Virus record (IMG/VR): IMGVR_UViG_3300009545_000018
Span: 1-64,000 of that record
Reading direction: 5' to 3' (one strand)
Length of the DNA: 64,000 bases
Under the pieces are notes generated by a model that was not told the origin of the DNA, did not search any database, and worked only from the letters and a program-made list of their open reading frames with translations. Every line of letters starts with the position of its first letter. The stretch's first letter is position 1. This document shows, piece by piece, positions 3 to 13,140 of the stretch. The translations under genes were made by a program, and so were the position numbers.

Positions 3-1337
3 AAACCTTCTCATGCCAACATTGTTTTTGTTTTGGCGGATGATTTTTCCTGGGATTTGGTTCAGTACATGCCGCATTTGCAGCAAATGCAAAAAGATGG
101 CATCACTTTCCAAAATTACTTTGTCGCCAATTCTTTGTGTTGTCCTTCTAGGGCAACTATTTTCACTGGTCAATTTCCACACCACACTGGAATTTATACC
201 AATGTAGGACCAGATGGTGGCTTTGTTAAAGCTCTGACTAGTAATCTAGAAGATCGAATGTTTGCATCAACCCTACAAGGTGCAGGATATTCTACTAGCA
301 TGCTAGGTAAGTATCTGAATGGATACAATCCTCTGAAGAATCCTCCTCGTCCTAATTGGGATAACTGGATTGTTGCCGGTTATGGTTATAATGAATTTAA
401 CTATGATTTAAGTGTTAATGGTACAATTGAGCACCATGCTGCATTGCCTGAGGATTATCTGACTGATGTACTATCTACTAAAGCTCAGTCACTGCTTAGC
501 AATGAAGATCCATTCTTTTTGGAATTGGCAACCTTCGCGCCGCATGCTCCATATATTCCGGCTCCGCGGCATGCTGGTCAATTTGGCACACTGATGTATC
601 CACGCACGGCTGCCTTTGCGGCGCGTCCTAAAGATACCGATCCCATCTGGTTACAGGTAGTGCCAGCCTTGACAGATAACAACATTACATATATTGATCG
701 TGAGTATAAGTTGCGAGCGCGTTCGGTTCTGGCAATCGACGAAGCACTAGCTGCCTTGCGCGAAAAATTACCTCCCAACACCTACTTGTTTTTCAGTTCC
801 GATAATGGGTATCACATGGGAGAAAGGTCAATGAAGGCAGGCAAGCGCACGCCTTATGATTTCGATATTCGTGTACCTTTGATTGTTGTAGGTCCGGGAG
901 TGCCAGTTGGAGTTAATGTAAACGAAGTCACTCAGACTATTGACTTGTTTCCGACCTTTGCTGACATTGCTGGGGTGGCTATTCCTGCTACGGTTGATGG
1001 GCGCAGCCTATTGCCGCTCTTGCAAGGGGAGCATCCACCCTGGCGTAGTTATGCTCTGGTGGAGCATCATGGGGGACCACTTGACCCTAGTGATCCTGAC
1101 GCTTTAGACGAAGAGATTGGTGGTCCTCCTACTTATGGCGCATTGCGTTATGATAATAGCTTGTATGTAGAATATTCCAATGGTGACGTAGAGTATCATG
1201 ATTTGGCAACCGATCCACTGGAGCTTGACAATACAGTAGCAGCTTTGCCAGTTGCCAAGAAAAAAGCTCTAAGCTCCAAGCTAGCAGCTTTGCTTAACTG
1301 CAGTCCAGCAGATTGCTGGAATGTTTCTACCAAGTAA
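3..1337 (+). CDS. Sulfatase (N-acetylglucosamine-6-sulfatase-like), 5'-truncated by the window edge
   Basis: Frame is open from base 3: KPSHANIVFVLADD (NIVFxxxDD motif), CCPSR (CxPxR formylglycine motif), GKYLNG, SDNGYHMG, YDLxxDPxELxN. Confidence 0.9.
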   Translation, partial: KPSHANIVFVLADDFSWDLVQYMPHLQQMQKDGITFQNYFVANSLCCPSRATIFTGQFPHHTGIYTNVGPDGGFVKALTSNLEDRMFASTLQGAGYSTSMLGKYLNGYNPLKNPPRPNWDNWIVAGYGYNEFNYDLSVNGTIEHHAALPEDYLTDVLSTKAQSLLSNEDPFFLELATFAPHAPYIPAPRHAGQFGTLMYPRTAAFAARPKDTDPIWLQVVPALTDNNITYIDREYKLRARSVLAIDEALAALREKLPPNTYLFFSSDNGYHMGERSMKAGKRTPYDFDIRVPLIVVGPGVPVGVNVNEVTQTIDLFPTFADIAGVAIPATVDGRSLLPLLQGEHPPWRSYALVEHHGGPLDPSDPDALDEEIGGPPTYGALRYDNSLYVEYSNGDVEYHDLATDPLELDNTVAALPVAKKKALSSKLAALLNCSPADCWNVSTK

Positions 1338-1367
1338 CCCATCGAATAACGGAAGGAAGCGTATAGC

Positions 1368-1577
1368 ATGAGCCGAGACAATTTCATTGTTCAATTAGAT
1401 AATGCTTTAACTCTGCTGCGGATGACGCAACTGCGGCACAAAATGACAGGTCCTGAACTAAGCCTGTTAAACCTAGCAGTTCATCATGCCATTACCAAGA
1501 TTGATCAAGCGATTGGTCCTCCTGGTTTCGATACAGCGGCAGCATTTGAAGAATTCTTCGGACGCCCTTTGGAGTGA
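1368..1577 (+). CDS. hypothetical protein (leaderless-type)
   Basis: ATG 30 nt after motif start. Confidence 0.75.
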   Translation: MSRDNFIVQLDNALTLLRMTQLRHKMTGPELSLLNLAVHHAITKIDQAIGPPGFDTAAAFEEFFGRPLE

Positions 1578-1584
1578 GAAGTTT

Positions 1585-1617
1585 AAGGAGACTGGAAACA
1601 GTCTCCTTTTTCTTTTT
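1585..1617 (+). terminator. Rho-independent terminator
   Basis: AAGGAGACTG-GAAA-CAGTCTCCTT followed by a T-tract. Confidence 0.85.
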
Positions 1618-1625
1618 GTGGCTGG

Positions 1626-1660
1626 TGGTATTGTCTTTGCATATTGCATGACTCATGCCA
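1626..1660. promoter_or_regulatory. Face-to-face pair of sigma54-like -24/-12 sites, copy 1
   Basis: TGGTATTGTCTTTGCA (+, 1626-1641) and TGGCATGAGTCATGCA (-, 1645-1660), both GG-N10-GC. Confidence 0.55.
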
Positions 1661-1812
1661 CATACCGACAAATACCTCCCATCTAATAACGGTAAGGAAC
1701 CACTAATTGATTCTAGCTACTAAGAGTTAGCCTTAATAGTAGTTAGAAGTTGTACCATATGCTAACTATATGGTGCCCCATCTAATAACGGTAAGAGACA
1801 CCAAGTAAAAAC

Positions 1813-2055
1813 ATGCAAAAAGAATACTTCAAAGACATCGTAAGTAAATTGCCAGCCGAATCTTTTGCGGCTGAAGAGTTGCTTGTCATGGCAAGGCATC
1901 AATATCTGGAATGTGCTAAGGATTGTCTTAAACCAGGACGCGGCAAGAGTGACAATGAAGTTGGGTTTTATGCGCTCGAAGCTGCCATTCAACTACAAGA
2001 AACTATCGATGTTTTATTCTGGGATAAGAAAACTTCCCATCCAGTAACTGGTTAA
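1813..2055 (+). CDS. hypothetical protein, paralog of 38099..38314
   Basis: Shared ARHxYLxxAKDxLK...G...A...LQxxID. Confidence 0.8.
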   Translation: MQKEYFKDIVSKLPAESFAAEELLVMARHQYLECAKDCLKPGRGKSDNEVGFYALEAAIQLQETIDVLFWDKKTSHPVTG

Positions 2056-2065
2056 AGTATTAGTC

Positions 2066-2275
2066 ATGGCTGCTAAATGCAAAGGTTACAAGTTTGCGGT
2101 TGAATGTTGTGCTTTCAACGATGAATCTGCTGAGACAGATCTTGAAACCATATCGCAAACCATTAGTGTTAGTTTAGTAGCCGATTTGTTTGGAATACCT
2201 GCCGAAAAAGTAGCCGCTGCTGTTTTGAAGGTTCGCAATAAATCGGACAACTGGATCGATATTGGATATGAATAA
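2066..2275 (+). CDS. hypothetical protein
   Basis: ATG 30 nt after motif. Confidence 0.75.
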   Translation: MAAKCKGYKFAVECCAFNDESAETDLETISQTISVSLVADLFGIPAEKVAAAVLKVRNKSDNWIDIGYE

Positions 2276-2332
2276 TTTTGGGTATCTACCTTAAGAAAAT
2301 AACCCATCCTTTAACGGATAGAGATATTGAAT

Positions 2333-2515
2333 ATGAGAGATAATCAAATCGCAACAACTGAAGATGGTAGGATTTCCATTCCAGACGTTCAAATTTTCCG
2401 AGTAGAAAATGGTTGGAAGCCGGTACCACTACCAGGCTACAGTTATATTGTGGCGGTAGTTAATATGCAAGGTACTTGTATTGGTTGGATGAAGAATCCC
2501 AATCCCATCTTTTGA
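2333..2515 (+). CDS. hypothetical protein
   Basis: Start revised to the ATG 30 nt after motif 2303. Confidence 0.7.
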   Translation: MRDNQIATTEDGRISIPDVQIFRVENGWKPVPLPGYSYIVAVVNMQGTCIGWMKNPNPIF

Positions 2516-2533
2516 CGGATAGATATATCCTAT

Positions 2534-2761
2534 ATGACAATCTCTAGTGATATGAGTCGAGAGTGGGAATTGGAAGGTAAGCTGCATAGAACAGCAGGCG
2601 ATGCTTTTCGGCAATTAGTGCCATCTAAAGGCGGATGTTTGGTAGCAGCCACTGATGTTTATCTCCTGGCTCTTAAAACAGAGTTGCATAAGTGGATTGC
2701 TGAGATTGATCAAGAGTTACAAGAACGTTGTCAAGAAGAGAGCGACAATGAGTTTGGATGA
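2534..2761 (+). CDS. hypothetical protein
   Basis: ATG 30 nt after motif. Confidence 0.75.
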   Translation: MTISSDMSREWELEGKLHRTAGDAFRQLVPSKGGCLVAATDVYLLALKTELHKWIAEIDQELQERCQEESDNEFG

Positions 2762-2915
2762 ATTAAAAGAAAAGATTATTGCAACAGCTTTGGAATGGCG
2801 ATACTTGGATGAAATCGAGCCCATTCCCAGTAACAAGCCGGGCGAGAAACTGAGGGAGCTAGCTTTTCTACTAGATGAATTGAATGAATCCCATCTTATA
2901 ACGGATAAGTCATAA
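2748..2915 (+). CDS. hypothetical protein
   Basis: Internal ATG (MSLDELK) overlapping the end of the upstream gene. Confidence 0.6.
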   Translation: MSLDELKEKIIATALEWRYLDEIEPIPSNKPGEKLRELAFLLDELNESHLITDKS

Positions 2916-2920
2916 CAGTT

Positions 2921-3265
2921 ATGAAGTCTTTCAAAGTTGCTGCCAAAGAAGTGAAATGGTTGACTGAGCCAGCCTTTGCTAGCAAGAAACGAACCGTGAC
3001 AATTGAAGTCTCGGAAACCGTTAGCTTTTATAATACCTTCTGGGATGGTGGTAGTAAGAATACTTACAGGGCTGTTCGTCTGCTAGACGGCAAGGTAGCT
3101 GAACTGGAAACTGGTTCAAGTCCTTGGGCGGCTATTGCTGAGGGCAAAAGCATGACACTAGAGCCCGGCATTGCCATCGTAGAGGAAAGTGTTTTCTGTG
3201 GTAAAATAATGCCACTCAGGATTCATTTGCATCCTTCTAATATCACTCCCTTTCTCAAGGAGTAA
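2921..3265 (+). CDS. hypothetical phage protein (WDGGSK motif)
   Basis: ATG 31 nt after motif; 114 aa. Confidence 0.8.
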   Translation: MKSFKVAAKEVKWLTEPAFASKKRTVTIEVSETVSFYNTFWDGGSKNTYRAVRLLDGKVAELETGSSPWAAIAEGKSMTLEPGIAIVEESVFCGKIMPLRIHLHPSNITPFLKE

Positions 3266-3297
3266 TTCCCATCTTCTAACGGCAGAAGAGAATCAAT

Positions 3298-3513
3298 ATG
3301 ACAGAGCAAGAAATTTTAGATATGTGTGCTAAATATACTACGGTTGACAATGCTATTAGGTTGTTTAATAGTGGTCTTTTAGACACTATGTCTACTGCTT
3401 TGCTGAAGACTTGCCGTTATATTCGGTTTCAAGATGGTCATTATCGGGCGACACATGAAGGCGTTCTAGCTGGATTGAAATTTAATATTCAGATTCAAAA
3501 GATTGGGATTTGA
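3298..3513 (+). CDS. hypothetical protein
   Basis: ATG 30 nt after motif. Confidence 0.75.
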   Translation: MTEQEILDMCAKYTTVDNAIRLFNSGLLDTMSTALLKTCRYIRFQDGHYRATHEGVLAGLKFNIQIQKIGI

Positions 3514-3547
3514 TTATCCCATCTAATGACGGAAAGGTATAACTATC

Positions 3548-3892
3548 ATGGGTTGGTCTTGTAGAGCAGAAGCCGGAAATACTTTGAATGCGTGGCAAGA
3601 TGCTTGTTTTGCCCAAACTGGAATGGCTAATGTCTTTCTGAGTAAGGGAGGTAGCGAGCGCAATCAATTTGCTGGTGGTTCTAAGTACATGTTTGAAGTC
3701 TCCAATAAAGAGCATCATGATGGCGCCATTACTGGCAGCATTCAGCGCTTCGTTGATGACACTCACGTAGTTAAAGCTGGTAGCTTTCGAATTGAACCAG
3801 ACGGCACTGTGAGTAGGGCTCCTGCCTTTCTCAAAGCTATCAAGGGAAAGCTACTAACTAGAAACGGTATTGGTTCTGGTGGTCCCATCTAA
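3548..3892 (+). CDS. hypothetical protein
   Basis: ATG 30 nt after motif; stop codon lies inside the next motif. Confidence 0.8.
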   Translation: MGWSCRAEAGNTLNAWQDACFAQTGMANVFLSKGGSERNQFAGGSKYMFEVSNKEHHDGAITGSIQRFVDDTHVVKAGSFRIEPDGTVSRAPAFLKAIKGKLLTRNGIGSGGPI

Positions 3893-3913
3893 TAACGGAA
3901 TAAACCAATTAGT

Positions 3914-4138
3914 ATGAGTTTAATAACAGAACTTTCTTCTCTGAAAAAAGAGATCAATGAAATTTTCAATTCTAATATGTCATGGGAATTGAAGTATGAT
4001 TTGATCTTTAGCGAGAAGCTTTCACAACAAGTCTTCGAACTAGTCGATCTGGATTACTACGATCCTGATACTACCTATGAGGAAGACGTTACAGCTTTTG
4101 TCAAAGCCCTTAATGACAAATGTCAAGATCTATCATGA
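3914..4138 (+). CDS. hypothetical acidic protein (YYDPDTTYEED)
   Basis: ATG 30 nt after motif. Confidence 0.8.
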   Translation: MSLITELSSLKKEINEIFNSNMSWELKYDLIFSEKLSQQVFELVDLDYYDPDTTYEEDVTAFVKALNDKCQDLS

Positions 4139-4416
4139 AAAAAGAAACCTATCAAGCCGCCCGAAATCGTTTGATCCAAGAATTCAAAGACTTGGGATTT
4201 GTTGTCAAGGATACTTTAAAGGTTCCTCAAGTGGAATTGCCTACTGGCGAGACCCTTTTGTTCAAGGCACAAGCTGTCTACACCAAAAGCAACAAGCTTT
4301 CATTGTGGGTTGACATTCGTGGTATGAGTGCTAGGCAGCTAGCTATTAAAGCTGGCGTTCTGGTATCTACCTTGAATTGGATTGATGGCACGTCTCCTTC
4401 ACTTAAAGTAAAATAA
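4135..4416 (+). CDS. hypothetical protein
   Basis: ATGA coupling to upstream stop. Confidence 0.7.
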   Translation: MKKETYQAARNRLIQEFKDLGFVVKDTLKVPQVELPTGETLLFKAQAVYTKSNKLSLWVDIRGMSARQLAIKAGVLVSTLNWIDGTSPSLKVK

Positions 4417-4570
4417 TGTGTTCTAAATTATTCTACCAATTGGTCTGGAATTCCTTTGATGCTGCATTCAAAGAATATGTGTGGCATCAACACCATGCCA
4501 AACGTGATCATTGGCAATATTACTATCTAGGTTGTTAATCCCATCTACTAACGGATATACACATATGAAT

Positions 4571-4954
4571 ATGGAACTAACAATTCAATGTCCTCTGTAC
4601 CGAATTTCCTACCTACTATGTAGTGCCTTTGAAGGCGGAAGTAATTACTGGTACTCAATTAATTCCGACACTCCTCCACCCAATGGCGTTGATCTTTCCG
4701 CCTTTGACGGTCATTGGGACACAGTATATGCACATGTGCATTATCCCTTGTGTGCGGGGGGCAGCCTCACCATTAAAGATATGGAAGATAACAACAAAAC
4801 CTATACTCTATCTTTGAAAGAAATTGAACACGGGCTGAAAGTCTTCGCTGAGAAGTATCCTCGCCATTTTGGCAATTGGCTGAGTGAAGATGATGATGCT
4901 ATTACTGGCGATGTATTCTTACAATGCTGTCTTTTTGGTGAAGCTAAATACTAA
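4571..4954 (+). CDS. conserved-type phage hypothetical protein (EGGSNYW...DAITGDVFLQxxLFGE)
   Basis: Start revised to the ATG 31 nt after motif 4540. Confidence 0.8.
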   Translation: MELTIQCPLYRISYLLCSAFEGGSNYWYSINSDTPPPNGVDLSAFDGHWDTVYAHVHYPLCAGGSLTIKDMEDNNKTYTLSLKEIEHGLKVFAEKYPRHFGNWLSEDDDAITGDVFLQCCLFGEAKY

Positions 4955-4989
4955 TAATCCCATCTTTTAACGGTCTATACAGGTATAGT

Positions 4990-5274
4990 ATGAAACGTCT
5001 TAATCCCGACAAGATGCAAGCTGTAATTGAAAGCCTACAAAAGTGTGACGATTGCAGCAATTTCGCTACAACCAAAACTGGTGTTTGGGATTGCGAAGAG
5101 CACAATCTCTGTGACTTTCATTTGAAAGAACGTCGTACGGCACTTGTTGCGCGCTATGGTGATTCTTCCAAAGGAGATTGGGAAGTAGAATACCCTTATG
5201 CTAATGCCTTGCGCGCCCTATTTAATGTAACAGAGATTCCAACTGTTATTCATGACGATACTCCCATCATTTAA
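4990..5274 (+). CDS. hypothetical protein with CxxC...CxxH
   Basis: ATG 31 nt after motif. Confidence 0.75.
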   Translation: MKRLNPDKMQAVIESLQKCDDCSNFATTKTGVWDCEEHNLCDFHLKERRTALVARYGDSSKGDWEVEYPYANALRALFNVTEIPTVIHDDTPII

Positions 5275-5292
5275 CGGATAGAGATTGATACT

Positions 5293-5517
5293 ATGAAGAT
5301 TGAACAATTCCTATGGAAAACAGTTGTTAAAACTGGTCGAGAAGCTGACTTACTATTGCAACAACAACTTGTTCGTATTGTTAGTCCTAGCAAGACAACT
5401 GACGGACCAGGTTGGGATCGATTAGCAGAGTTTAATGAGGTTGTAAAGCCAACTGATACTGTCATGGTTTTCGACAAGAAAATTGGTTGGCAGACTATCA
5501 ATCATCCCTCGGAATAA
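5293..5517 (+). CDS. hypothetical protein
   Basis: ATG 30 nt after motif. Confidence 0.75.
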   Translation: MKIEQFLWKTVVKTGREADLLLQQQLVRIVSPSKTTDGPGWDRLAEFNEVVKPTDTVMVFDKKIGWQTINHPSE

Positions 5518-5519
5518 AT

Positions 5520-5756
5520 ATGTTGAAATGTATTAAAGTAGCTGATTACAGGAGGATGCCATTAGAAGTACGTACTTCTACTCTCTGCTACTTACGTGAT
5601 TTTTTTGGTGCGCCAGTAGGAACCTACTACATGAAAACGGTTCCAGGTCCAGCTGACAATAGTAGCTATCCTGCTTTAGATAATTGGTTAGTATCAGAAG
5701 GAGCCTTGTTAGGTGAGCCAGTTCTGATTAAGTTTGATAAGGTACCCATCTTTTAA
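5520..5756 (+). CDS. hypothetical protein
   Basis: ATG 2 nt after upstream stop. Confidence 0.65.
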   Translation: MLKCIKVADYRRMPLEVRTSTLCYLRDFFGAPVGTYYMKTVPGPADNSSYPALDNWLVSEGALLGEPVLIKFDKVPIF

Positions 5757-5774
5757 CGGATACAAATAACAAAT

Positions 5775-5894
5775 ATGCTGACAAATTATCACAAACAAAC
5801 TTGGCGTGGTAAAGTGTTCTTTTGGGCGACCTTACCACTAGCAATTGTTATTGTATCAGCAATGGCAGTAAAAGATCATTTCAATCGAGAATAG
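5775..5894 (+). CDS. 39-aa small membrane protein (not in ORF track)
   Basis: MLTNYHKQTWRGKVFFWATLPLAIVIVSAMAVKDHFNRE; ATG 30 nt after motif 5745, stop just before motif 5897. Confidence 0.7.
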   Translation: MLTNYHKQTWRGKVFFWATLPLAIVIVSAMAVKDHFNRE

Positions 5895-5926
5895 ATCCCA
5901 TCTGCTAACGGACGCTACCATTTGAT

Positions 5927-6136
5927 ATGACAAGGTTCGCAATTAAGAAGGGTGACAAGTTGATTTGTCTTACAACAACTCGCACAGACGGAAGCACGTT
6001 TAAGTGTTTCTATCTTTTCGAAACGGCAGCTGATTGGAATCTGTATAATGCATCTGGTAAACAGAAGTCTAATGTAGTTCGCACCTATGAAGAATATGAT
6101 GGTGAGAGCACTGTAGTTACTAACAATGGTGATTGA
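5927..6136 (+). CDS. hypothetical protein
   Basis: ATG 30 nt after motif. Confidence 0.75.
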   Translation: MTRFAIKKGDKLICLTTTRTDGSTFKCFYLFETAADWNLYNASGKQKSNVVRTYEEYDGESTVVTNNGD

Positions 6137-6174
6137 ATTTCCCATCTAATGACGGAAGTTATAATAGTTTTAAG

Positions 6175-6444
6175 ATGCCCGAAGAAAAAACAGTTGCGCA
6201 AAGGTTTGCAGAAAAAGCCAATCAAATAAATCTTGCCAAGATTGCAAGGGAAAAAGAATCTGCTGAAGAATCTTACAATAAGATCTTGAATCTTATAGAA
6301 GAAGAATCTCAAAAGGGCGAATATAAACTTGCCCTTCCTCCTAATTGTAATCCATCTTCTTTTCTTCGAGAAAGAATTTGTAGTGATGGATTTGATCTTA
6401 CATGCTTTGATAAAGTGTGGATTATTTCTTGGCAAAATAAATAA
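6175..6444 (+). CDS. hypothetical protein, distantly similar to 60857 and 61156
   Basis: Start revised; shared I...A/S.KG...GF...ISW pattern. Confidence 0.7.
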   Translation: MPEEKTVAQRFAEKANQINLAKIAREKESAEESYNKILNLIEEESQKGEYKLALPPNCNPSSFLRERICSDGFDLTCFDKVWIISWQNK

Positions 6445-6614
6445 TGAAAAATATTTTACGTACTTTTCATCATTGGGTAGAGCGCCCTTGTGTTGCTGTA
6501 ATTTATCGACAGAATCGTGCTCGACGTGAAAGGCAAGACTTTAAAGCGCCTTGGTGGTTTTCTTTAGCATCCAAGGTAGAATTCAAGCTACGCTATCTTT
6601 ACAAAAAATCTTAA
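6444..6614 (+). CDS. 56-aa hypothetical protein (not in ORF track)
   Basis: TAATG coupling; stop abuts motif 6616. Confidence 0.55.
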   Translation: MKNILRTFHHWVERPCVAVIYRQNRARRERQDFKAPWWFSLASKVEFKLRYLYKKS

Positions 6615-6645
6615 TCCCATCTGATAACGGAGTCAACCAGTTATT

Positions 6646-6897
6646 ATGACTAAAATAGTTAGTATTTATAAATGCCAAGATGATACATTTAAAGTAGATC
6701 TTTCAATATCTTTTCAAGTTATTACTAATGGTTATTTTACTCCAGAGCAAGATGCTACTTTCAAAATTAGACACTTGAGGGGCTTTACTCAAGAGCAAGC
6801 GGAATCTATTGTAGGCTTGGTAAATAGTTGTTATGACATGGGTTATGTGCAAGCTCAACGAGACCTTGCCAATCGTTTAGGTTTTAGGTTTAAATAA
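6646..6897 (+). CDS. hypothetical protein
   Basis: ATG 30 nt after motif. Confidence 0.75.
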   Translation: MTKIVSIYKCQDDTFKVDLSISFQVITNGYFTPEQDATFKIRHLRGFTQEQAESIVGLVNSCYDMGYVQAQRDLANRLGFRFK

Positions 6898-6963
6898 CCC
6901 ATCGGATAACGGCGTGAGATAACAAACGAGTCTTGCAAAAACCAAAGGAAAACAAAACTGTCA

Positions 6964-7110
6964 ATGAGTTTTAATCAGCAAACGGTTTCTAGACTAGGTG
7001 TCGCTAATCGTCCGGGCGACTATGATGCCAAAACCTTTATGGCAAAGGGGCGGCGTGCCAAAGATCGAAACGAGCAAATGTTTGCTATCAATGGATATAC
7101 TGTCGTCTGA
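6964..7110 (+). CDS. 48-aa hypothetical protein (not in ORF track)
   Basis: Motif 6898, AAAGGA SD-like sequence, MSFNQQTVSRLG... Confidence 0.55.
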   Translation: MSFNQQTVSRLGVANRPGDYDAKTFMAKGRRAKDRNEQMFAINGYTVV

Positions 7111-7292
7111 CTGCTATTCGAAATGATTTGAGTTTACTAGTTAAGTAAATATTACAATTAAATACTAAGCATGACATGTAGGCAGAGTCTTTAAACGCCT
7201 ATTGTCTCAATAAGACATAGAGGGTTTGGTGATCTCCCAAGAGTGAAAACACCATTTTATTTCCCATCTTTTAACGGATGTATGCAACAAGT

Positions 7293-7541
7293 ATGACTAA
7301 GAAAGAAAAAATTAAGTTTCTTCAATCTCTTGTTAAAGATCCAGATATGCTTGGACATGCACGCCAATCAATTGAAGATCATTTGATTGAGTTTCGTGAT
7401 AGGAGAATTTCTCAACCGTTTCGTGGCAATGGTCTGGTTGTTAGGGAACCTAACGGTAAACCTTCTGATATTATCAGACTTGGTACGGAAGATGCTGTTC
7501 GAATTGGTTTGCTTGCTATTATTGAGAAGTTAAATGGTTAA
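7293..7541 (+). CDS. hypothetical protein
   Basis: Start revised to the ATG 30 nt after motif 7263. Confidence 0.8.
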   Translation: MTKKEKIKFLQSLVKDPDMLGHARQSIEDHLIEFRDRRISQPFRGNGLVVREPNGKPSDIIRLGTEDAVRIGLLAIIEKLNG

Positions 7542-7857
7542 GACAGTTCAACAAATTTTGTACATGACTACTTACACTCCCAGCATTCGTTCTGAGGTAG
7601 ATGGCTGGACTTTTGAATGTGGTGATGTTGATATGGATAAGGTGCTTCAAGATCCCAACATTCATGTTGGATTTTTGAAAGGTTGGGAGGCGGGACTTTA
7701 TTATCATCCCAAAACTCCCGCCCATGCTTTACGATTAGGTTGGAAGCTTTTGGCTCCACCAGAAAAATTTGACATGGGTTTAGAAAAATATCCTTGGGGT
7801 TGGCACTGGATTATGGTTAGGGAAGTAGAAACCAACATGCTAGGTGCTTATAAATGA
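7534..7857 (+). CDS. hypothetical protein
   Basis: Overlap-coupled ORF. Confidence 0.75.
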   Translation: MVKTVQQILYMTTYTPSIRSEVDGWTFECGDVDMDKVLQDPNIHVGFLKGWEAGLYYHPKTPAHALRLGWKLLAPPEKFDMGLEKYPWGWHWIMVREVETNMLGAYK

Positions 7858-8093
7858 AATATACTTTAATTGGTGGAATTACACTTAAATCAAACACTGG
7901 CACTACTACGTATACTGGTCTAAAAGTAATTGGTAGTTCTTACACCGAAAATGGAATCAAAGATTTATGGAATAAAAACTATGAAGCTTGCGGTGGACTA
8001 CTGCTAGTGCTAGATGCTGAAGGTCGAGAGACTTATCCAGAAATCATCTATGATGCGATTAAACACAAAGCAGCTTATCAAATCGAATCTTGA
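7854..8093 (+). CDS. hypothetical protein
   Basis: ATGA coupling; followed by terminator. Confidence 0.7.
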   Translation: MKYTLIGGITLKSNTGTTTYTGLKVIGSSYTENGIKDLWNKNYEACGGLLLVLDAEGRETYPEIIYDAIKHKAAYQIES

Positions 8094-8096
8094 ACT

Positions 8097-8132
8097 AAAG
8101 ACCCTGAGCTTAAACAGTTCGGGGTCTTTTTT
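8097..8132 (+). terminator. Rho-independent terminator
   Basis: AAAGACCCTGAGCT-TAAAC-AGTTCGGGGTCTTT plus T-tract. Confidence 0.85.
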
Positions 8133-8143
8133 ATTTTGAGGTA

Positions 8144-8178
8144 TGGTATTGCTTTTGCATAATGCAGCAATCGTACCA
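8144..8178. promoter_or_regulatory. Face-to-face pair of sigma54-like -24/-12 sites, copy 2
   Basis: TGGTATTGCTTTTGCA (+, 8144-8159) and TGGTACGATTGCTGCA (-, 8163-8178). Confidence 0.55.
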
Positions 8179-8320
8179 CCACCTACCACTACTTACAAAA
8201 TGCCACACTGAAACTATTGCTAGTGAAAAAGTGTCTCCCATCATCAAACGGCTGACGGCGCTATTTGCAACACAATGTCAGAATACCACACTGACAACAC
8301 CCTTACCTCAGGAATATGTA

Positions 8321-8548
8321 ATGAAAGTTTTTACTGACGAATTTGTAAACGCTGTTAAAGGCAAACTGGAAACTCTTCCGGATGGTGATTATTTGACGCG
8401 AGAGAAGCTTTGCATTGCCATTAACGTTCCAGCAGTGTATGCCAATGCCATTAGCATGTTGATGGCTCAACCGGAGTTTAGTGGTTTTGAAGCCGTCAAG
8501 AGCCGAGGCATTCGACGTAAAAAGATTCAGCCGATTGCTGCTGAGTAA
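8321..8548 (+). CDS. putative winged-helix DNA-binding protein
   Basis: AGGA SD; helical body with a basic wing FEAVKSRGIRRKK, resembling the 12403 family. Confidence 0.6.
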   Translation: MKVFTDEFVNAVKGKLETLPDGDYLTREKLCIAINVPAVYANAISMLMAQPEFSGFEAVKSRGIRRKKIQPIAAE

Positions 8549-8610
8549 TTTTGCTACAATAGCTCCCATCACATAACGGAACCTATTTCCTATCTAAAGG
8601 AGATAGGAAT

Positions 8611-8916
8611 GTGAAGATTAAAATTCCGTTTTACAATCGTCTGGGTCAACAAGTAGCTGAACTGGACCACGACATTGGTCGTGGTTTTTTCTTAGTTGAA
8701 TTTCAGCAACCATTACAAAATAGGGAAGTAAGAATTTTCCCTTATAAATGGGAGATTACCGAAGATAACGGGCAAAGCGCTGCTGGAGCTTTAAAAGAAG
8801 CTCTCCGCTTTGCCTGTGATCTGCAAAAGAATTCCCATCCTCAACGGATGCTGATGCTTAATGTTCTTGGAGATAATCTCCGAAAGATAATTCATACACT
8901 TCATAGTAGGAACTAA
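8611..8916 (+). CDS. hypothetical protein
   Basis: GTG start with AGGA SD after motif 8565. Confidence 0.7.
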   Translation: MKIKIPFYNRLGQQVAELDHDIGRGFFLVEFQQPLQNREVRIFPYKWEITEDNGQSAAGALKEALRFACDLQKNSHPQRMLMLNVLGDNLRKIIHTLHSRN

Positions 8917-9066
8917 TATGCAACTTCCTCCTCTAATTGATTTTAATTTAGTGTTTGTTCCTTTTGCCAAAATTCATTTTGATGTAACGGCTAATTGCAT
9001 TGATAGTGTAGTTTACATCTTTGGAATTAGAGTGGCATATTGGGTAGCACTTAGGGAAATTTAATA

Positions 9067-9414
9067 ATGAATATCGATCCTGTTCGAGAAAATCTATTAA
9101 AAAGTTATTCTTCCAGAGAATATGGAACTTGGGAGATTTTGGGCGAAGATCCTAATTGTGATTTTAGTGGACCTCATAGTCAACCACGACTAATGATTGT
9201 AACTGGAACTTATCACAATGTGATAGAATATGCCTTGTCACTCAAAGGATTTATCCAGTGGGGTACCGGCGGATCTATCAATAAGATTATAGCGAGGCTA
9301 GATGTTGATCATCTTTATTCTGCTGAAGCTGCAGAGCTAAAGAATAAAAAAGCAAAGCTAGAAAAAGAATTGGCTGAAATTTCTTCCAAACTGGAAAAGA
9401 TTTACAAAAAATAA
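9067..9414 (+). CDS. phage hypothetical protein (GEDPNCD motif, C-terminal coiled coil)
   Basis: 115-aa ORF ending at motif 9417. Confidence 0.8.
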   Translation: MNIDPVRENLLKSYSSREYGTWEILGEDPNCDFSGPHSQPRLMIVTGTYHNVIEYALSLKGFIQWGTGGSINKIIARLDVDHLYSAEAAELKNKKAKLEKELAEISSKLEKIYKK

Positions 9415-9447
9415 TTCCCATCTATTAACGGACGTGTGTCTCTTAAC

Positions 9448-9708
9448 ATGAAGAGTCAAGTTTACAGCATCTTAAGCGGAGAGCAGATTGAAGTTACTTT
9501 CCCAAGTACTTTAGCTCCACCCAGTAAGCATCCATTACGTCGCCATTCTGGTGTTATCGTAAAGAATAGTCTGACCAATAAGATCGAAACTGGAACTATT
9601 GTCTCTCACTTGACACTAAGTGAATGGTCAGTAGTCAATGGCTACCAAGTTATCGACTATGGGCGTACCTATAAGGCTCGTCCAAGTGAAATAACACGGT
9701 TGTTTTAA
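9448..9708 (+). CDS. hypothetical protein
   Basis: Start revised to the ATG 31 nt after motif. Confidence 0.75.
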   Translation: MKSQVYSILSGEQIEVTFPSTLAPPSKHPLRRHSGVIVKNSLTNKIETGTIVSHLTLSEWSVVNGYQVIDYGRTYKARPSEITRLF

Positions 9709-9759
9709 CCGCAGAATTTAACTGCGCCGCACTTACCCATCCTATAACGGACCACAATA

Positions 9760-9996
9760 ATGAATGTATTATTCGATAATGCCTGCGGTAAGTTTCATAT
9801 TTGTGCTATTGAAAGATTCAATGGTGGAAAGATTAGTGAATGCGCTGTAATCTATCGATATGGTGCTGTAGTACTAAAAGAACTTACCTTTCCTCCGGAG
9901 AAGAGCCAGGTTGCAATCGATATTGCTTCACATATTTTTGATGCGATTGAAACATATCATGATTATGTCGTCTGTGATTTTGCTGACAGTATGTGA
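9760..9996 (+). CDS. hypothetical protein
   Basis: Bounded by motifs 9736 and 9997. Confidence 0.7.
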   Translation: MNVLFDNACGKFHICAIERFNGGKISECAVIYRYGAVVLKELTFPPEKSQVAIDIASHIFDAIETYHDYVVCDFADSM

Positions 9997-10026
9997 CCCA
10001 TCAAATAACGGAATGATTCATAAGTT

Positions 10027-10275
10027 ATGACACAATTTCATCGTAGGAGTGTTGGTAACTACCAAATTGTAGTAAAAGAGGATACTCATGGCTATCCAGT
10101 TTTGGAATATGGTTATGGTGAAAATCCAAAACAACTTCGCCACTTTCATAAAAATGAAATTGGAACTGCAGTAGACGAAGCTAATTTCATTGCAGACATA
10201 ATTAAAGAATATCGTAGTAATTTAGTAAATCAAATCGGAAAACTGTTACAAGAAGAATATATTACTAAATTGTAA
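10027..10275 (+). CDS. hypothetical protein
   Basis: ATG 30 nt after motif. Confidence 0.75.
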   Translation: MTQFHRRSVGNYQIVVKEDTHGYPVLEYGYGENPKQLRHFHKNEIGTAVDEANFIADIIKEYRSNLVNQIGKLLQEEYITKL

Positions 10276-10648
10276 TCCCATCAATTAACGGATGAATATT
10301 TAAAATGAAATTAAAGAATATCTGGAAAAGAATCAAAGATTATATTTTAGATGTTAAAGCCACTTGGGACTACACTACCAATGAAGGTGGGCAATTTGGG
10401 GCAGCAGATATTCCTGATAAAAATTTAAAGCAAGAAAAAGAATCATAACAAACGAGTAAATTTGATATGTCACGTCGTATTACAGAGCTAGCAGTCATTC
10501 AAAAACAAGATCCTACTCGTCTTAGAATCCGAACCGTTGAGACGGAACGACGGAAGCAGGTTAAGTCTCGAGCCCGCCGTAAAGAAGCTTGGCGCAAAGA
10601 TCCCATCAATTAACGGCAGAAAGACATAAAACAGAAGGAGAAAAGAAA

Positions 10649-10831
10649 ATGCTGAAATATCTAGTAATCGGTCTGGCAATGATTGGCAGTGCATATCTTC
10701 TGATGGTATATGCCAATCCGCTCTGGCAAAAGGTAGCATTCACCACAAATCTAACCGGGGCAGTTTCATATGCCACTTGTGTTTTGATTGCTGTTGCGTG
10801 TTTCCTGTTTACCAAACTTGCCACTAAGTAA
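10649..10831 (+). CDS. small two-TM membrane protein
   Basis: AAGGAG SD; two hydrophobic segments. Confidence 0.75.
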   Translation: MLKYLVIGLAMIGSAYLLMVYANPLWQKVAFTTNLTGAVSYATCVLIAVACFLFTKLATK

Positions 10832-10850
10832 AAATAAACAAGACTCTTTT

Positions 10851-10960
10851 GGGTTGAACCTAACTAGCCACTACATAGCAGTAAATCCTTATTAGGTTGC
10901 TACAAGTAGCAAGACAGGCAAGTCAGCTGGCATTAGGCTGTAAGAGTGTGCTCTAAACCC
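10851..10960 (+). ncRNA. candidate multibranch structured RNA
   Basis: GGGTT/AACCC closing stem around several hairpins (AACCTAA/TTAGGTT, TGCTAC/GTAGCA, AGAG/CTCT). Confidence 0.35.
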
Positions 10961-10975
10961 ACTATTGTAAATTAC

Positions 10976-11149
10976 ATGAAATTCAATAATAAAACTCACC
11001 TTTACGATCCTCAGTGTACTTGTCACGCTTGTTCTCAATTTGAGATTAGCTTGAAAGACATGATTCAAAGGGAACGGGAATATCGTCCTCATTGGTCGGA
11101 GCTGGGACGACCCGTATCTGAAAAGACTTTCAAGAAACCCATCGCTTAA
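10976..11149 (+). CDS. hypothetical protein (CxCxxC)
   Basis: Internal ATG; stop inside motif 11138. Confidence 0.55.
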   Translation: MKFNNKTHLYDPQCTCHACSQFEISLKDMIQREREYRPHWSELGRPVSEKTFKKPIA

Positions 11150-11162
11150 CGGATAAGACACT

Positions 11163-11579
11163 ATGATTGAACTTGGAAAGAAAGTTAGGTTTGAATACGA
11201 TAACAATTACTACGCAGGTATTGTTATTATTATCAATCATGCATTAACAAATTGTATTGTATCTAGTCTTGATCCTATTTTAAATAATCCTGTATTTGAA
11301 GCTTGCCAACTAGGCGATCACGTAGATAAAAGTTGGTGTGGTAATCATTTTGAGTGTGTGGATAATATCTCTGATTACCATCATAAGTGGCATGGTTGGT
11401 TTCAAATGGGTGATCTTGAAGTTGTTGAGCCTCAGGTGTTTTCTCCACGCACAGACACTATTGATGGTTGCAATTGCAAGACTTGCGGTCAGTTCACTTT
11501 TATGGCAGCCGCTAATCAAAGTGATGGAACCTTCAAGTGTTATTCGTGTAGAAATAATCCAATTCGAACGTACTACTAA
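11163..11579 (+). CDS. protein with C-terminal zinc ribbon (CxxC...NQxDGTFxCxxC)
   Basis: Module shared with 22991 and 60348. Confidence 0.8.
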   Translation: MIELGKKVRFEYDNNYYAGIVIIINHALTNCIVSSLDPILNNPVFEACQLGDHVDKSWCGNHFECVDNISDYHHKWHGWFQMGDLEVVEPQVFSPRTDTIDGCNCKTCGQFTFMAAANQSDGTFKCYSCRNNPIRTYY

Positions 11580-11611
11580 TTCCCATCCATTAACGGATTG
11601 AACTAAATAGT

Positions 11612-11920
11612 ATGACTGAATGGAATAAAGAAAAACTCATCAATCTACTTACAGTCAATGATAAAGCTGTAGAGCTTGCCATTGTAATTATCTACAATCG
11701 CCAGACTTTAGAGGAACAATCTTTGGAAAAAACTAAACATCACAATGGAATTGGTTTCACAGGATGGCACGCTAGTCTAGGAACCTATTACGCAAAATGG
11801 ATTTTGCGAGGTAAGTCTCTTAGTGGTCAGCAGCTAGCCAAAGCTCGTAAGATTGCTTTGAGTTATACGTCTCAGCTCTTGGACGAAATTAAGAGCAAAC
11901 AACATCATGCCGCTCTATAG
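11612..11920 (+). CDS. phage hypothetical protein, paralog of 28747..29049
   Basis: NDKAV...QTxEEQ...NxxGF...ARxIALxY. Confidence 0.85.
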   Translation: MTEWNKEKLINLLTVNDKAVELAIVIIYNRQTLEEQSLEKTKHHNGIGFTGWHASLGTYYAKWILRGKSLSGQQLAKARKIALSYTSQLLDEIKSKQHHAAL

Positions 11921-11927
11921 GGCGGAA

Positions 11928-12003
11928 GTCACCTAGTCAGTTGAGGTTACCCGAATAAAAAGGGGGCTATTGCAATAGTTGCCGATGAAACTGGCTAGGT
12001 GGC
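11928..12003 (+). ncRNA. candidate structured RNA with kink-turn
   Basis: 15-bp stem GTCACCTAGTCAGTT/AACTGGCTAGGTGGC, GA / GAT-GA internal loop, two inner hairpins. Confidence 0.45.
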
Positions 12004-12052
12004 GGTACTAATTTCCCATCAGATAACGGATAAGATAGTGAGATAGAGATAA

Positions 12053-12136
12053 GCTACTGTGGTGGAACTGGCATACACAGTTGATTTAAAATCAACCGCC
12101 GTAATTGGCTTGGGGGTTCAAGTCCCTCCAGTAGCA
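12053..12136 (+). tRNA. tRNA-Leu(UAA), CCA not encoded
   Basis: GCTACTG/CAGTAGC acceptor stem, GTTGA-TTTAAAA-TCAAC anticodon arm, long variable arm, GGGGG-TTCAAGT-CCCTC T arm. Confidence 0.9.
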
Positions 12137-12154
12137 CTAAAAAAAGTAAGTAAC

Positions 12155-12277
12155 ATGAAGGATAGCAGTAGGCACAAAAATGACAGCGCAGATTTTCTGT
12201 ATGGTGCCGCTTGGTGCATCATTGGATGCCTGAGCATTCTGGCAGTGTTGGCTGGCATTGCAGTCTGGTTTAAATAA
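12155..12277 (+). CDS. small membrane protein
   Basis: Start moved downstream of the tRNA; one TM segment. Confidence 0.55.
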   Translation: MKDSSRHKNDSADFLYGAAWCIIGCLSILAVLAGIAVWFK

Positions 12278-12402
12278 AACAAGTTCAATCTTCCCATCAG
12301 ATAACGGTGGTAAGCAGTAAGATGTAAGAGCGGCGAAGACGACAGGATGTCGACGAAGTCTCTCGAAAATAAACAAAAACAAAAAACAAAGGAAGTAACA
12401 AA

Positions 12403-12759
12403 ATGGATCTAAATAAGTTGGTTGTGCGTAGTGGTGGTTTGGTTGATGTGACTGCGACTCTCAAGGCTTGTGGTGAGGCTCTCACTGCTGCCAATACGGA
12501 AGCGCAAGAGGCGTTTGCTGCGGTTGGTCCCGCGGTTGATGCGGTGTTTGCGAAGCATGCTGGTAGCAGCATCAATATGCCTGCTATCGAGTCATTCGTG
12601 GTTGCCGAGCTTGGCACTTCGCCTGCCAAGTATAAGGAGACTGCGGAGTTGGTTTCTAACTACGTTCGCGCCAATGCTGGTGAGAATGGTAAGTTTGAAA
12701 TCCGCAAGGGTAAGGGCGGCGGCGTTCGCCTCCGTGCCACGGCTGCTGCCGCGGAGTAA
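12403..12759 (+). CDS. putative winged-helix / nucleoid-type DNA-binding protein, KGKGGG family copy 1
   Basis: Strong SD after an A-rich leader; FEIRKGKGGGVRLR wing; paralogs at 15401 and 21779. Confidence 0.75.
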   Translation: MDLNKLVVRSGGLVDVTATLKACGEALTAANTEAQEAFAAVGPAVDAVFAKHAGSSINMPAIESFVVAELGTSPAKYKETAELVSNYVRANAGENGKFEIRKGKGGGVRLRATAAAAE

Positions 12760-13140
12760 TCCGAGCAGAGGTTAGATCTGACTGTATACTGGAAGATCAA
12801 AAACAATCCGCTGGACATAAGTTCTGCAGGCTGAATTAACAGTGCATGAGACGGCAACGCCTCATGGGATGCTAGTGCAGAGATTACCTATCAACGTATT
12901 AGCGCTAAGGAGATATTAATGCAACATAAAGTTATGCACGTTCGTGTAGAAGATATAGCAAAATTTATTGCTGAAATCAATAAATTACAGTGTGTTGTAT
13001 TAATGGTAACTCCATGTACAGTTGAAAGTCTTTATAATAAACAAGACTATATGACAGTAGAATATAAGCAACCATAAATTCAGCAATCTAATTCTAAACA
13101 TTAGAGATTCATATCTAGACGATAGTGGTAGCACTATAAA

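What the first reader, a model, noticed from the sequence alone, without database searches (positions are those of the whole stretch)
1338..12307. One-gene-per-motif cassette array: stop codons abut or lie inside the next motif
Seen: upstream genes often end immediately before the motif (TAA-CCCATC at 1338 and 6898, TGA-CCCATC at 9997, within 1-2 nt at 3268, 5897, 6616, 9417, 10277, 11582). Others run into it and use its TAA/TGA as their stop, giving proteins ending PI, PIF, PII or PIA (3548, 2333, 5520, 4990, 10976). The units are unrelated genes of about 120-400 bp. Inference: each motif+gene behaves as a self-contained cassette. The 15-bp repeat could also serve as a microhomology or recombinase site for gene capture and shuffling, like an integron array without attC hairpins. 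Dispersed motif-led paralogs (1813/38099, 11612/28747, 12403/15401/21779) fit movement of whole units.
Basis: partly seen in the sequence, partly recalled or inferred. Interest (0 to 1): 0.6.

Follow-up and report, generated by a model that had tools for sequence, protein, structure and literature searches.

The report
Promoter-like box cassettes in a megaphage
A 448-kb soil phage carries about 90 tiny genes in a row, each led by the same 15-base box that most likely switches the gene on, and related phages differ by whole box-plus-gene units, so the box also marks where genes are gained, lost and reshuffled.

Summary
CCCATCNNNTAACGG occurs 79 times in the 447,763-bp virus record. Every copy is on the + strand, and none is expected by chance. 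A start codon lies 29-31 nt after the box start at 95 of 174 sites across the phage family. The upstream ORF stops inside the box or within 10 nt of it at 51 of 90 sites. The box also precedes three tRNA genes. It has no hairpin. It is kept in a 445-kb relative whose core proteins are about 50% identical and which shares almost none of the cassette genes. I read it as a family-specific promoter with a very short leader; this is inferred, not shown. The cassette idea is supported. Three indels between related metagenome contigs run exactly box to box, homology blocks begin 0-4 nt before a box, and cassette order is scrambled among relatives. An integron-like mechanism is not supported: no tyrosine or serine recombinase and no attC-like structure were found, but a RecA-like gene is present. 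The closest analogue is PeSL-mediated shuffling in T4-type phages. This is a new variant of a known kind.

The parts
1..1337 (+). 3' part of a box-led secreted sulfatase ORF. It starts at genome 447574, after the box at 447528, and is cut by the record ends.
   Evidence: The joined ends read as one open frame. Pfam Sulfatase E=5e-45.
1338..15314 (+). Dense part of the cassette array inside the window: 28 exact and 5 one-mismatch boxes, spaced about 100-670 bp apart, all on the + strand.
3268..3513 (+). Typical cassette. Box at 3268-3282, 15-nt leader, ATG at 3298 (+30), stop at 3513, next box at 3518.
3518..3892 (+). Cassette whose ORF (3548-3892) ends on a TAA inside the next box (3884), giving a ...PI end.
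2890..3265 (+). Cassette shared with the metagenome contigs L181 and L171. Nucleotide homology begins 1 nt before the box.
12015..12137 (+). Box at 12015-12029 followed 23 nt later by tRNA-Leu(UAA) at 12053-12137: a box-led non-coding gene.
   Evidence: ARAGORN, Rfam 53.7 bits, sequence
1678..1692 (+). Box with no ORF behind it. The next box follows 99 nt later.
1585..1608 (+). Intrinsic-terminator-like hairpin with a T run inside the array. Others lie at 8097-8129 and 8664-8687. Only three strong ones occur in 20 kb.
8237..8548 (+). Degenerate box (1 mismatch) at 8237. Homologues in L178 and L185 align only from residue about 50 of the naive ORF 8162-8548, so the gene probably starts at 8321.
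11582..11920 (+). Box-led gene with box-led paralogues at 28694/28747-29049 and at genome 439588/439618-439905.
12293..12759 (+). Box-led gene with a 110-nt leader and a strong AAAGGAG. Paralogues at 15300/15401-15766 and 21678/21746-22141. A homologue in relative B is also box-led.
17960..57144 (+). Sparse boxes downstream of the dense array, at 17960, 18888, 21678, 24973, 27338, 28694, 31854, 38055, 45565 and 57130. The gene after 18888 has a box-led orthologue in relative B.

Best explanation
The 15-bp box is the recognition sequence of a promoter class specific to this family of about 445-kb soil myophages. It drives a fast-changing block of about 35 kb made of small accessory genes of unknown function (probably early genes) and a few tRNAs.

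Each unit is box + about 15 nt of purine- and A/T-rich leader + ORF. Transcription is inferred to start in or just after the box, which gives very short 5' leaders. The reading frame that enters the box in phase is closed by the box's own TAA.

The box is repeated about 90 times in direct orientation. Recombination between copies could come from the phage's RecA-like system, from replication slippage, or from exchange between co-infecting relatives. It deletes, inserts and reorders whole units without damaging their neighbours, so the regulatory repeat doubles as the breakpoint of cassette shuffling.

Shown: the anatomy, its conservation across relatives, the box-to-box indels and the scrambled cassette order.
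Inferred: promoter function, the position of the transcription start, early timing and the recombination mechanism.
For: Strand and number. 79 exact copies on one strand, none on the other, and none for the control pattern.

Position. Copies are intergenic. The ATG is at +30 in 36 of 90 own sites, and all 36 open an ORF in frame. It is at +29..+31 in 95 of 174 family sites.

Transcription-level signal. The box precedes three tRNA genes. The only two boxes between 58 kb and 433 kb both sit directly upstream of tRNAs. That argues for a transcription signal, not a translation signal.

Deep conservation.
- A circular relative of about 445 kb has core proteins about 50% identical. It carries 27 exact copies of the invariant form CCCATCGCCTAACGG (29 with one mismatch allowed), all on one strand and at the syntenic locus.
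- It shares almost no array genes, and there the box is followed by leaders of 16-97 nt carrying canonical AAGGAG.
- Two gene families keep the box in both phages.
- At least 11 further metagenome contigs carry dense arrays, up to 45 boxes in 11.5 kb.

Other promoter classes. Sigma-70-like sites are not enriched in the array. A different upstream word, TGATATA(T), is about 9-fold enriched before core genes in both phages and nearly absent from the array. This fits two promoter classes.

Terminators. Three strong terminator-like hairpins lie in the first 20 kb of the window. Boxes follow the first, at 1585-1608.

Shuffling.
- Three exact box-to-box indels.
- Homology blocks start 0-4 nt before a box and end at the ORF stop or at the 3' edge of the next box.
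- Cassette order is scrambled in L270, L171, L176 and L181 compared with the window's phage.
- A RecA-like ORF and a Rad50/SbcC-like ORF are present.
Against: - No transcript data exist. The only public run holding this DNA is a DNA run kept as contigs.
- No polymerase or factor that could read a GC-rich 15-mer was identified. No multisubunit RNAP domain, no DxDGD motif shared by both phages, and no T7-like motif set was found. The Pfam search for T7-like RNAP had a silent control, so it is inconclusive. There is only one sigma-70-like ORF.
- The box looks like no promoter consensus I know.
- The start site cannot be placed. T at +29 is kept even when the ATG lies further off, which hints at a start near +30 and leaderless mRNAs. 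Yet eight genes have good Shine-Dalgarno (SD) sequences at +22..+29.
- Breakpoints at the box could partly reflect selection for intact genes in a region whose intergenic space is almost only the box.
- The indels are between contigs 70-89% identical, not between near-clonal strains.
Confidence: 0.6

Rival explanations
1. The box acts in RNA. Long polycistronic transcripts from a few upstream promoters are cut or bound at each box by a phage or host factor, such as an endoribonuclease or a translational operator. This would set the 5' end or the translation rate of each small gene.
For: - Fixed distance to the ATG.
- Unidirectional array with few terminators.
- The region around the box is unusually unstructured, as a single-stranded RNA site would be.
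- A cleavage site upstream of tRNAs is conceivable.
Against: - Isolated boxes far from the array (45565, 57130, genome 71737, 76021, and five in relative B) would each need their own upstream promoter, but nothing else is conserved upstream of any box.
- Boxes follow the terminator-like hairpin at 1585-1608.
- In relative B the distance to the ATG varies from 16 to 97 nt after the box, which does not fit a translational operator.
Confidence: 0.15
2. The box is an asymmetric operator for a phage DNA-binding regulator. That could be a repressor or shut-off protein of the 'stoperator' type, which silences or times the whole block. It would not be the promoter itself.
For: - Asymmetric 15-mer, one orientation relative to transcription, dozens of intergenic copies.
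- This resembles the 13-bp stoperators of Cluster A mycobacteriophages (PMC9283540; mentioned in PMC3203893).
Against: - No other conserved promoter element lies near the box, and sigma-70-like sites are not enriched.
- The spacing to the ATG is tight.
- The phage has no integrase, so there is no sign of a temperate lifestyle.
- No candidate repressor was identified.
Confidence: 0.1
3. The box is the core site of a dedicated, so far unrecognised site-specific recombinase that captures and excises cassettes: a phage 'integron' without attC hairpins.
For: - Exact box-to-box indels, two of them with identical flanking 15-mers.
- Scrambled cassette order.
- The array is about 10 points richer in G+C than the backbone in both complete genomes, as if it drew on a shared gene pool.
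Against: - No tyrosine or serine recombinase, with positive controls.
- No inverted repeat or hairpin.
- The box is 5' of genes and tRNAs at expression-signal distances.
- Repeat-mediated general recombination already explains the indels, as it does for PeSLs (PMC2839356).
- No joints were seen in the contigs, though that is a weak test.
Confidence: 0.07
4. The box is mainly a translation signal in the manner of the start-associated sequences of Cluster K mycobacteriophages.
For: - The ATG is at +29..+31 in over half of the sites.
- ATG is strongly preferred as start codon.
- SD-like words are enriched at +16..+18.
Against: - Three boxes lead tRNA genes.
- The box has no SD core and ends 15 nt before the ATG.
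- Relative B uses separate canonical SDs at variable distance.
Confidence: 0.05

Closest known systems
PeSL (promoter-early stem-loop) regulatory cassettes of T4-type phages (Arbiol et al. 2010, PMC2839356; Comeau et al. 2014, PMC4122927)
   Same: - About 50-100 repeated regulatory motifs concentrated in fast-changing (hyperplastic) regions, each directly upstream of a small gene of unknown function.
- The stop codon of the upstream gene, the motif, the SD and the start codon are packed together.
- Insertions, deletions and replacements between related phages are bounded by the motifs.
- General recombination between the repeats, not a dedicated recombinase, is the proposed driver.
   Different: - PeSLs are sigma-70 consensus promoters plus a stem-loop terminator. 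Here the repeat is a GC-rich 15-mer unlike sigma-70 promoters, with no stem-loop.
- The phage is not T4-like in its replication genes (DnaE-type Pol III alpha).
- PeSL promoter activity and mini-circles were shown experimentally; neither has been shown here.
Consensus early promoters of jumbo phages read by virion RNA polymerases (AR9: AAATATATATTAT-N6-G at 41 start sites, PMC5312081; phiKZ, PMC8244752)
   Same: A phage-specific, highly conserved motif unlike host promoters, repeated tens of times upstream of early genes in a giant genome.
   Different: - Those motifs are AT-rich, lie about 6 nt from the start site, give 5' UTRs of 26 nt or more, and are read by phage multisubunit RNAPs.
- Here no phage RNAP was found, the box is GC-rich and the leaders are at most about 17 nt.
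Start-associated sequences (SAS) of Cluster K mycobacteriophages (PMC3203893)
   Same: - Asymmetric short repeat in one orientation, close to ATG start codons of non-structural genes.
- The upstream stop codon sometimes lies inside the repeat.
- Conserved across subclusters in front of different genes.
- Function unproven.
   Different: - SAS is 13 bp, lies 3-7 bp from the start and contains the AGGAG core.
- The box here ends 15 nt before the ATG, has no SD core, also leads tRNA genes, and occurs about 90 times against 11-19.
Integron cassette arrays (intI, attI, attC; established knowledge)
   Same: A one-directional array of single-gene units separated by a repeated element, with cassette-level gain, loss and reordering.
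   Different: - No integrase.
- The repeat is 5' of the gene and not an imperfect palindrome 3' of it.
- It has no secondary structure.
- Cassettes appear to carry their own expression signal instead of sharing one Pc promoter.
Halovirus HF2 intergenic repeats that carry promoters (PMC8707807)
   Same: Families of intergenic repeats in a virus genome that proved to be promoters.
   Different: HF2 is an archaeal virus. Its repeats are AT-rich, 29 and 58 bp long and far fewer, and no cassette shuffling was described in what I read.

Membership tests
Integron | Tyrosine recombinase IntI next to the array | tested here: not met
   PF00589 search of the complete 447,763-bp genome found no match, while all 14 control genomes rang. 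PF00239 also found none.
Integron | attC: an imperfect inverted repeat that folds as a hairpin, at the 3' end of each cassette | tested here: not met
   The box is asymmetric. The 55-nt windows spanning it fold more weakly than random array windows (-6.2 against -9.8 kcal/mol). Windows upstream of it equal random. The box lies 5' of the ORF, 15 nt before the ATG.
Integron | Excised circular cassettes | not testable with these tools
   Only assembled contigs of the source sample were available; no joints were seen.
PeSL regulatory cassettes (T4-type phages) | Sigma-70 consensus -35/-10 promoter in the repeat | tested here: not met
   The box is not sigma-70-like. Sigma-70-like sites number 60 against 57.6 expected in 20 kb.
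PeSL regulatory cassettes (T4-type phages) | Stable stem-loop (terminator or attenuator) within the repeat | tested here: not met
   Only three strong terminator-like hairpins occur in 20 kb, and none is tied to the box.
PeSL regulatory cassettes (T4-type phages) | Repeats concentrated in hyperplastic regions upstream of genes of unknown function | tested here: met
   The array shares almost no genes with a relative whose core is collinear. Twenty ORFs were scanned: no informative Pfam family (one DUF3307 hit and weak sub-threshold zinc-domain hits), and the ten also run against PHROGs gave only three families of unknown function.
PeSL regulatory cassettes (T4-type phages) | Indels and replacements between related phages bounded by the repeats | tested here: met
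   Three exact box-to-box indels. Twelve of 22 homology-block starts lie at a box.
Jumbo-phage virion-RNAP early promoters | Phage-encoded multisubunit RNA polymerase | tested here: not met
   PF00562 found no match, with 14 of 14 controls positive. No DxDGD motif is shared by both phages. The 15 large ORFs scanned against Pfam or PHROGs gave structural or replication functions, or nothing. Very divergent enzymes could still be missed.
Jumbo-phage virion-RNAP early promoters | Transcription starts mapped at a fixed distance from the motif early in infection | not testable with these tools
   No RNA run holds this DNA.
T7-type single-subunit RNAP promoter | T7-like RNA polymerase gene | tested here: inconclusive
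   The PF00940 search found nothing, but its control rang nowhere. A regular-expression search for motifs A, B and C found no ORF with two of the three.
Start-associated sequences (Cluster K) | Repeat 3-7 bp from the start codon and containing the SD core | tested here: not met
   The box ends 15 nt before the ATG, has no AGGAG, and also leads tRNAs.
Stoperator-type repressor sites | Cognate repressor and temperate life cycle | tested here: inconclusive
   No integrase. A repressor was not searched for systematically.

The most novel reading that the evidence does not exclude
The box defines an unrecognised transcription system. A factor delivered with the virion or made very early, possibly the phage's single small sigma or a protein with no known family, would retarget the host polymerase to a GC-rich 15-bp box and start about 15 nt downstream of it, at the A of the ATG. 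About half of the roughly 90 accessory genes would then be made as leaderless mRNAs. The same box would serve as the exchange point of a gene pool shared across soil megaphages of very different base composition.
Probability: 0.15. Interest if true: 0.75.

Novelty: new variant of a known kind. Interest (0 to 1): 0.5.

Why it matters
Huge phages carry hundreds of small genes of unknown function, and how these are expressed and exchanged is mostly unknown.

This family offers a very clean case. One 15-bp signal marks about 90 accessory units. It is stable over deep divergence: core proteins are about 50% identical and backbone G+C ranges from 31% to 39%. It also coincides with the breakpoints of gene gain, loss and reordering.

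- It extends the PeSL principle, that regulatory repeats act as recombination joints, beyond T4-type phages and beyond sigma-70 promoters.
- It gives a simple sequence tag for finding the accessory-gene pool of these phages in soil metagenomes.
- It points to an unidentified factor that reads a promoter unlike any described.
- The box plus leader could also serve as a compact expression module once its reader is known.

Tried and rejected
**Searches for relatives**
- Megablast of 12.5 kb against 50,697 phage records found nothing.
- A 17-mer scan of IMG/VR gave mostly chance single hits. Counting the looser box in the fetched loci then picked out the true relatives.
- Two-box patterns in IMG/VR found nothing new.
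- L169 was a chance hit.
- The near-identical contig G004 (99.99%) has no indels, so it is uninformative. L270-L273 are 100% identical to each other.

**What reads the box**
- T7-like RNAP: the Pfam control was silent, so that search is inconclusive. A motif search by regular expression was negative.
- Multisubunit RNAP: negative.
- A Myb-like protein, tried because TAACGG resembles a Myb site as I recall it: negative.
- phmmer of three large unknown ORFs against PDB found nothing.
- PHROGs and Pfam on 15 large ORFs gave terminase, portal, sheath, baseplate, Pol III alpha, RNR and ligase, but no polymerase for RNA.

**Other ideas**
- The leaderless model (start at +30) is not adopted, because eight genes have good SDs at +22..+29. 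It is not excluded.
- A 'three-frame stop' design of the leader: stops in frames 1 and 2 are only mildly enriched (38% and 43% against 30%), and all three frames are closed at only 15% of sites.
- A Chi-like or packaging signal is rejected because the box is intergenic and at a fixed distance from start codons.

**Host and expression**
- Host inference from the sulfatase: the best hits are 52-54% identical and spread over many soil phyla, so this is uninformative.
- No RNA run holds the DNA, and contigs of the source run show no joints.

Full report
**What the window is**

The window is the first 64 kb of a 447,763-bp virus record (CheckV completeness 100%) from a rhizosphere metagenome, contig Ga0105237_10000004. 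The genome has 31% G+C and nearly all genes lie on the + strand.

It encodes a tail sheath, baseplate J, terminase, portal, DnaE-type Pol III alpha, ribonucleotide reductase, NAD ligase, a RecA-like protein, one small sigma-70-like protein and 37 tRNAs. It is therefore a very large myovirus-type phage. No cultured relative was found: Pol III alpha is at most 34% identical to any phage record.

The record ends cut through one ORF, a box-led secreted sulfatase, which reads through when the ends are joined. The genome is therefore circular or circularly permuted.

**Check of the observation**

The box CCCATCNNNTAACGG occurs 79 times exactly, always on the + strand. It never occurs on the - strand, and the reversed control pattern never occurs. 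Eleven more copies have one mismatch.

The copies form a single block from genome 433,607 across the record ends to about 15,300. They then thin out up to 76,021.

Over all 90 sites the upstream long ORF stops inside the box at 26, abuts it at 4 and ends within 10 nt of it at 21 more. The share that ends on the box's own frame-0 stops is what random frames would give. The point is extreme packing, not preferential use of that TAA. The named paralogues are real.

**Anatomy**

- A T precedes the box in 80% of copies, and nothing further upstream is conserved.
- Downstream, the ATG lies exactly at +30 in 36 of 90 own sites. All 36 are in frame with an open ORF, so this ATG is the start codon and not a promoter element.
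- In that subset the four bases before the ATG are mostly TAAT.
- Across the phage family the ATG is at +29..+31 in 95 of 174 sites. SD-like words are enriched at +16..+18: 38% of sites against 13-17% in control windows.
- The box region has no hairpin and is less structured than random array sequence.
- Sigma-70-like sites are not enriched, and only three strong terminator-like hairpins lie in the first 20 kb.
- The twenty array ORFs scanned have no informative Pfam family (one DUF3307 hit and weak sub-threshold zinc-domain hits). The ten also run against PHROGs gave three families of unknown function.

**The box is not only in front of proteins**

- The box at 12015 is followed 23 nt later by tRNA-Leu(UAA).
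- The only two boxes between 58 kb and 433 kb, at genome 71737 (one mismatch) and 76021, both sit just upstream of tRNA genes, at 71786 and 76113.

This speaks for a signal that acts at the level of transcription, or possibly RNA processing, and against a pure translation signal.

**Relatives**

A pattern scan followed by counting in the fetched loci picked out four IMG/VR records.

- One is 99.99% identical to the window's phage and has no indels.
- The other three are contigs of one other phage, here called B. Two of them, one covering the other, overlap the third by 127 bp at both ends and close a circle of about 445.2 kb with 38.6% G+C (G+C).
- B is collinear with the window's phage over about 350 kb, at about 50% amino-acid identity. 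Its array shares almost no genes with it.
- B has 27 exact copies (29 with one mismatch allowed) of the invariant form CCCATCGCCTAACGG, all on one strand and at the syntenic place. Here too they are dense over about 20 kb and then sparse.
- In B the leader runs from 16 to 97 nt and often carries a canonical AAGGAG. The RNA must therefore begin at or near the box.
- Two gene families are box-led in both phages.

A scan of metagenome contigs with box + spacer + TAATATG found ten short contigs with dense arrays, for example 27 boxes in 8.8 kb. A protein search added an 11.5-kb contig, L270, with 45 boxes. Array G+C ranges from 40 to 51%.

Yes, in the data available.

Indels:
- L173 and L178 are 81-85% identical. 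They differ by two units, each running exactly from one box to the next. One unit is flanked by identical 15-mers.
- L180 has one extra 251-bp unit relative to L172, whose right flank is 89% identical. That unit is flanked by two identical copies of CCCATCGAGTAACGG.

Homology blocks:
- Of 22 informative nucleotide homology blocks, 12 begin 0-7 nt before a box in both partners. About 3% would be expected for each end by chance.
- Blocks end at the ORF stop or at the 3' edge of the next box.

Cassette order:
- Eight cassettes shared with L270 appear in the order 433.3, 438.2, 434.0, 435.7, 439.6, 436.6, 443.8, 437.8 (positions in kb in the window's genome).
- L171, L176, L181 and L172/L180 also show cassettes in new neighbourhoods.

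Caveat: the intergenic space is almost only the box. Selection for intact genes would push observable junctions there as well. The compared contigs are also 70-89% identical, not near-clonal.

**Mechanism**

The best reading is a family-specific promoter with a very short leader, which also serves as the substrate of repeat-mediated recombination. The reasons are:
- strict co-orientation with genes;
- intergenic position at a fixed geometry;
- use in front of both tRNA and protein genes;
- isolated copies far from the array;
- retention of the 12 fixed positions across deep divergence while the genes turn over;
- a second, different upstream word, TGATATA(T), that marks core genes in both phages and avoids the array.

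No site-specific recombinase exists in the genome. A RecA-like ORF and a Rad50/SbcC-like ORF do. General or slippage-type recombination between direct repeats explains box-to-box deletions. Exchange between co-infecting relatives explains insertions and reordering. This is the logic shown experimentally for PeSLs in T4-type phages (PMC2839356, PMC4122927).

What is not shown:
- that the box promotes transcription;
- where transcription starts. A start near the 3' end of the box fits the SDs at +16..+29. A start at +30, giving leaderless mRNAs, fits the T kept at +29 and the cluster of SDs beginning at +30..+33. The two cannot be separated here;
- that the block is early;
- what reads the box. 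No phage RNA polymerase was recognised (one search is inconclusive), and only one sigma-like ORF was found, 61% identical in B.

**Comparison with known systems**

- It works like PeSL cassettes but fails two of their defining features, the sigma-70 consensus and the stem-loop.
- It resembles the consensus early promoters of phiKZ and AR9 in being phage-specific and highly repeated. It is GC-rich, has minimal leaders and has no phage RNAP behind it.
- It resembles Cluster K start-associated sequences in orientation and closeness to ATG starts. It lies further from the start, lacks the SD core and also leads tRNAs.
- It is not an integron.

A literature search for the two half-sites together with 'phage' found nothing relevant.

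**Verdict**

- The integron-like recombinase part is not supported.
- The feature is a new variant of a known kind, of moderate interest. The open question is which factor reads the box.

**Limits**

- ORFs were called by simple rules.
- Most relatives are short contigs.
- The host is unknown.
- No alternative genetic code was applied.

Noticed in passing
window 1-1337 and genome 447528-447763: The record's two ends cut one ORF: a box-led sulfatase of 508 aa with a signal-peptide-like N-terminus. It matches Pfam Sulfatase and is 52-54% identical to sulfatases of diverse soil MAGs. A near-identical contig runs 5 nt past the record's end with letters that differ from the record's head, so a few bases may be missing at the junction.
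   Followed up: partly
window 1-20000 and genome 433600-447763, against the rest of the genome: Array genes are much richer in G+C than core genes (GC 41.7% against 30.2%; GC3 38.6% against 18.8%). Relative B shows the same offset (45-47% against 38.6%). Possible causes are host-matched codon use for genes translated before the phage tRNAs appear, or a shared mobile gene pool.
   Followed up: partly
genome 212881-213035 and 108213-108302 (outside the window): Two adjacent tRNAs with anticodon CUA, which ARAGORN labels Pyl and which could be amber suppressors, and one tRNA call with a four-letter anticodon. The phage has 37 tRNAs in all. Standard-code ORFs are long, and no other code was applied or tested.
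   Followed up: no
genome about 80-440 kb (outside the array); in the window only 1-2 copies per 20 kb: The word TGATATA(T) is about 9-fold enriched in the 65 nt upstream of core genes, both in this phage and in relative B, and it is nearly absent from the box array. It looks like an extended -10 and may be a second, later promoter class, perhaps read through the phage sigma.
   Followed up: partly
genome 434008-434379 (L168:4008-4376): A 123-aa acidic protein with two CxxCxG zinc-binding motifs is the most widespread cassette gene. It occurs in the window's phage, in B, in L171, L172, L180 and L270, and as 18 database homologues. One homologue lies on a phage contig of 60% G+C that has no box. 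The Atlas places it in phage-only clusters of unknown function.
   Followed up: partly
window 41190-44062, 51292-52427, 62321-63144; genome 64729-71069 and 430485-432071: Several runs of tandem paralogous small genes (27-52% aa identity) have no boxes between them. One family has 12 members spread over both sides of the array.
   Followed up: no
window 12293-12402, 15300-15400, 21678-21745: Three box-led paralogues keep unusually long leaders (68-110 nt) that end in a strong AAAGGAG. Two share ATAAGATGTAAG just after the box, and similar GTGTAAG words follow boxes in L171, L172 and B. This may be a leader RNA element.
   Followed up: partly
window 1678-1776; genome 437770-437939: Boxes followed by about 100-170 nt with no ORF before the next box. 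The second unit is conserved at 84% in contig L270 from box to box. These could be small RNAs or decayed cassettes.
   Followed up: no
genome 382573-383202 (L148:1327-1953): The only sigma-70-like ORF: 209 aa, with a Pfam region 2 hit and a C-terminal stretch that looks like a helix-turn-helix by eye. It lies next to the ribonucleotide reductase genes and is 61% identical in relative B.
   Followed up: partly
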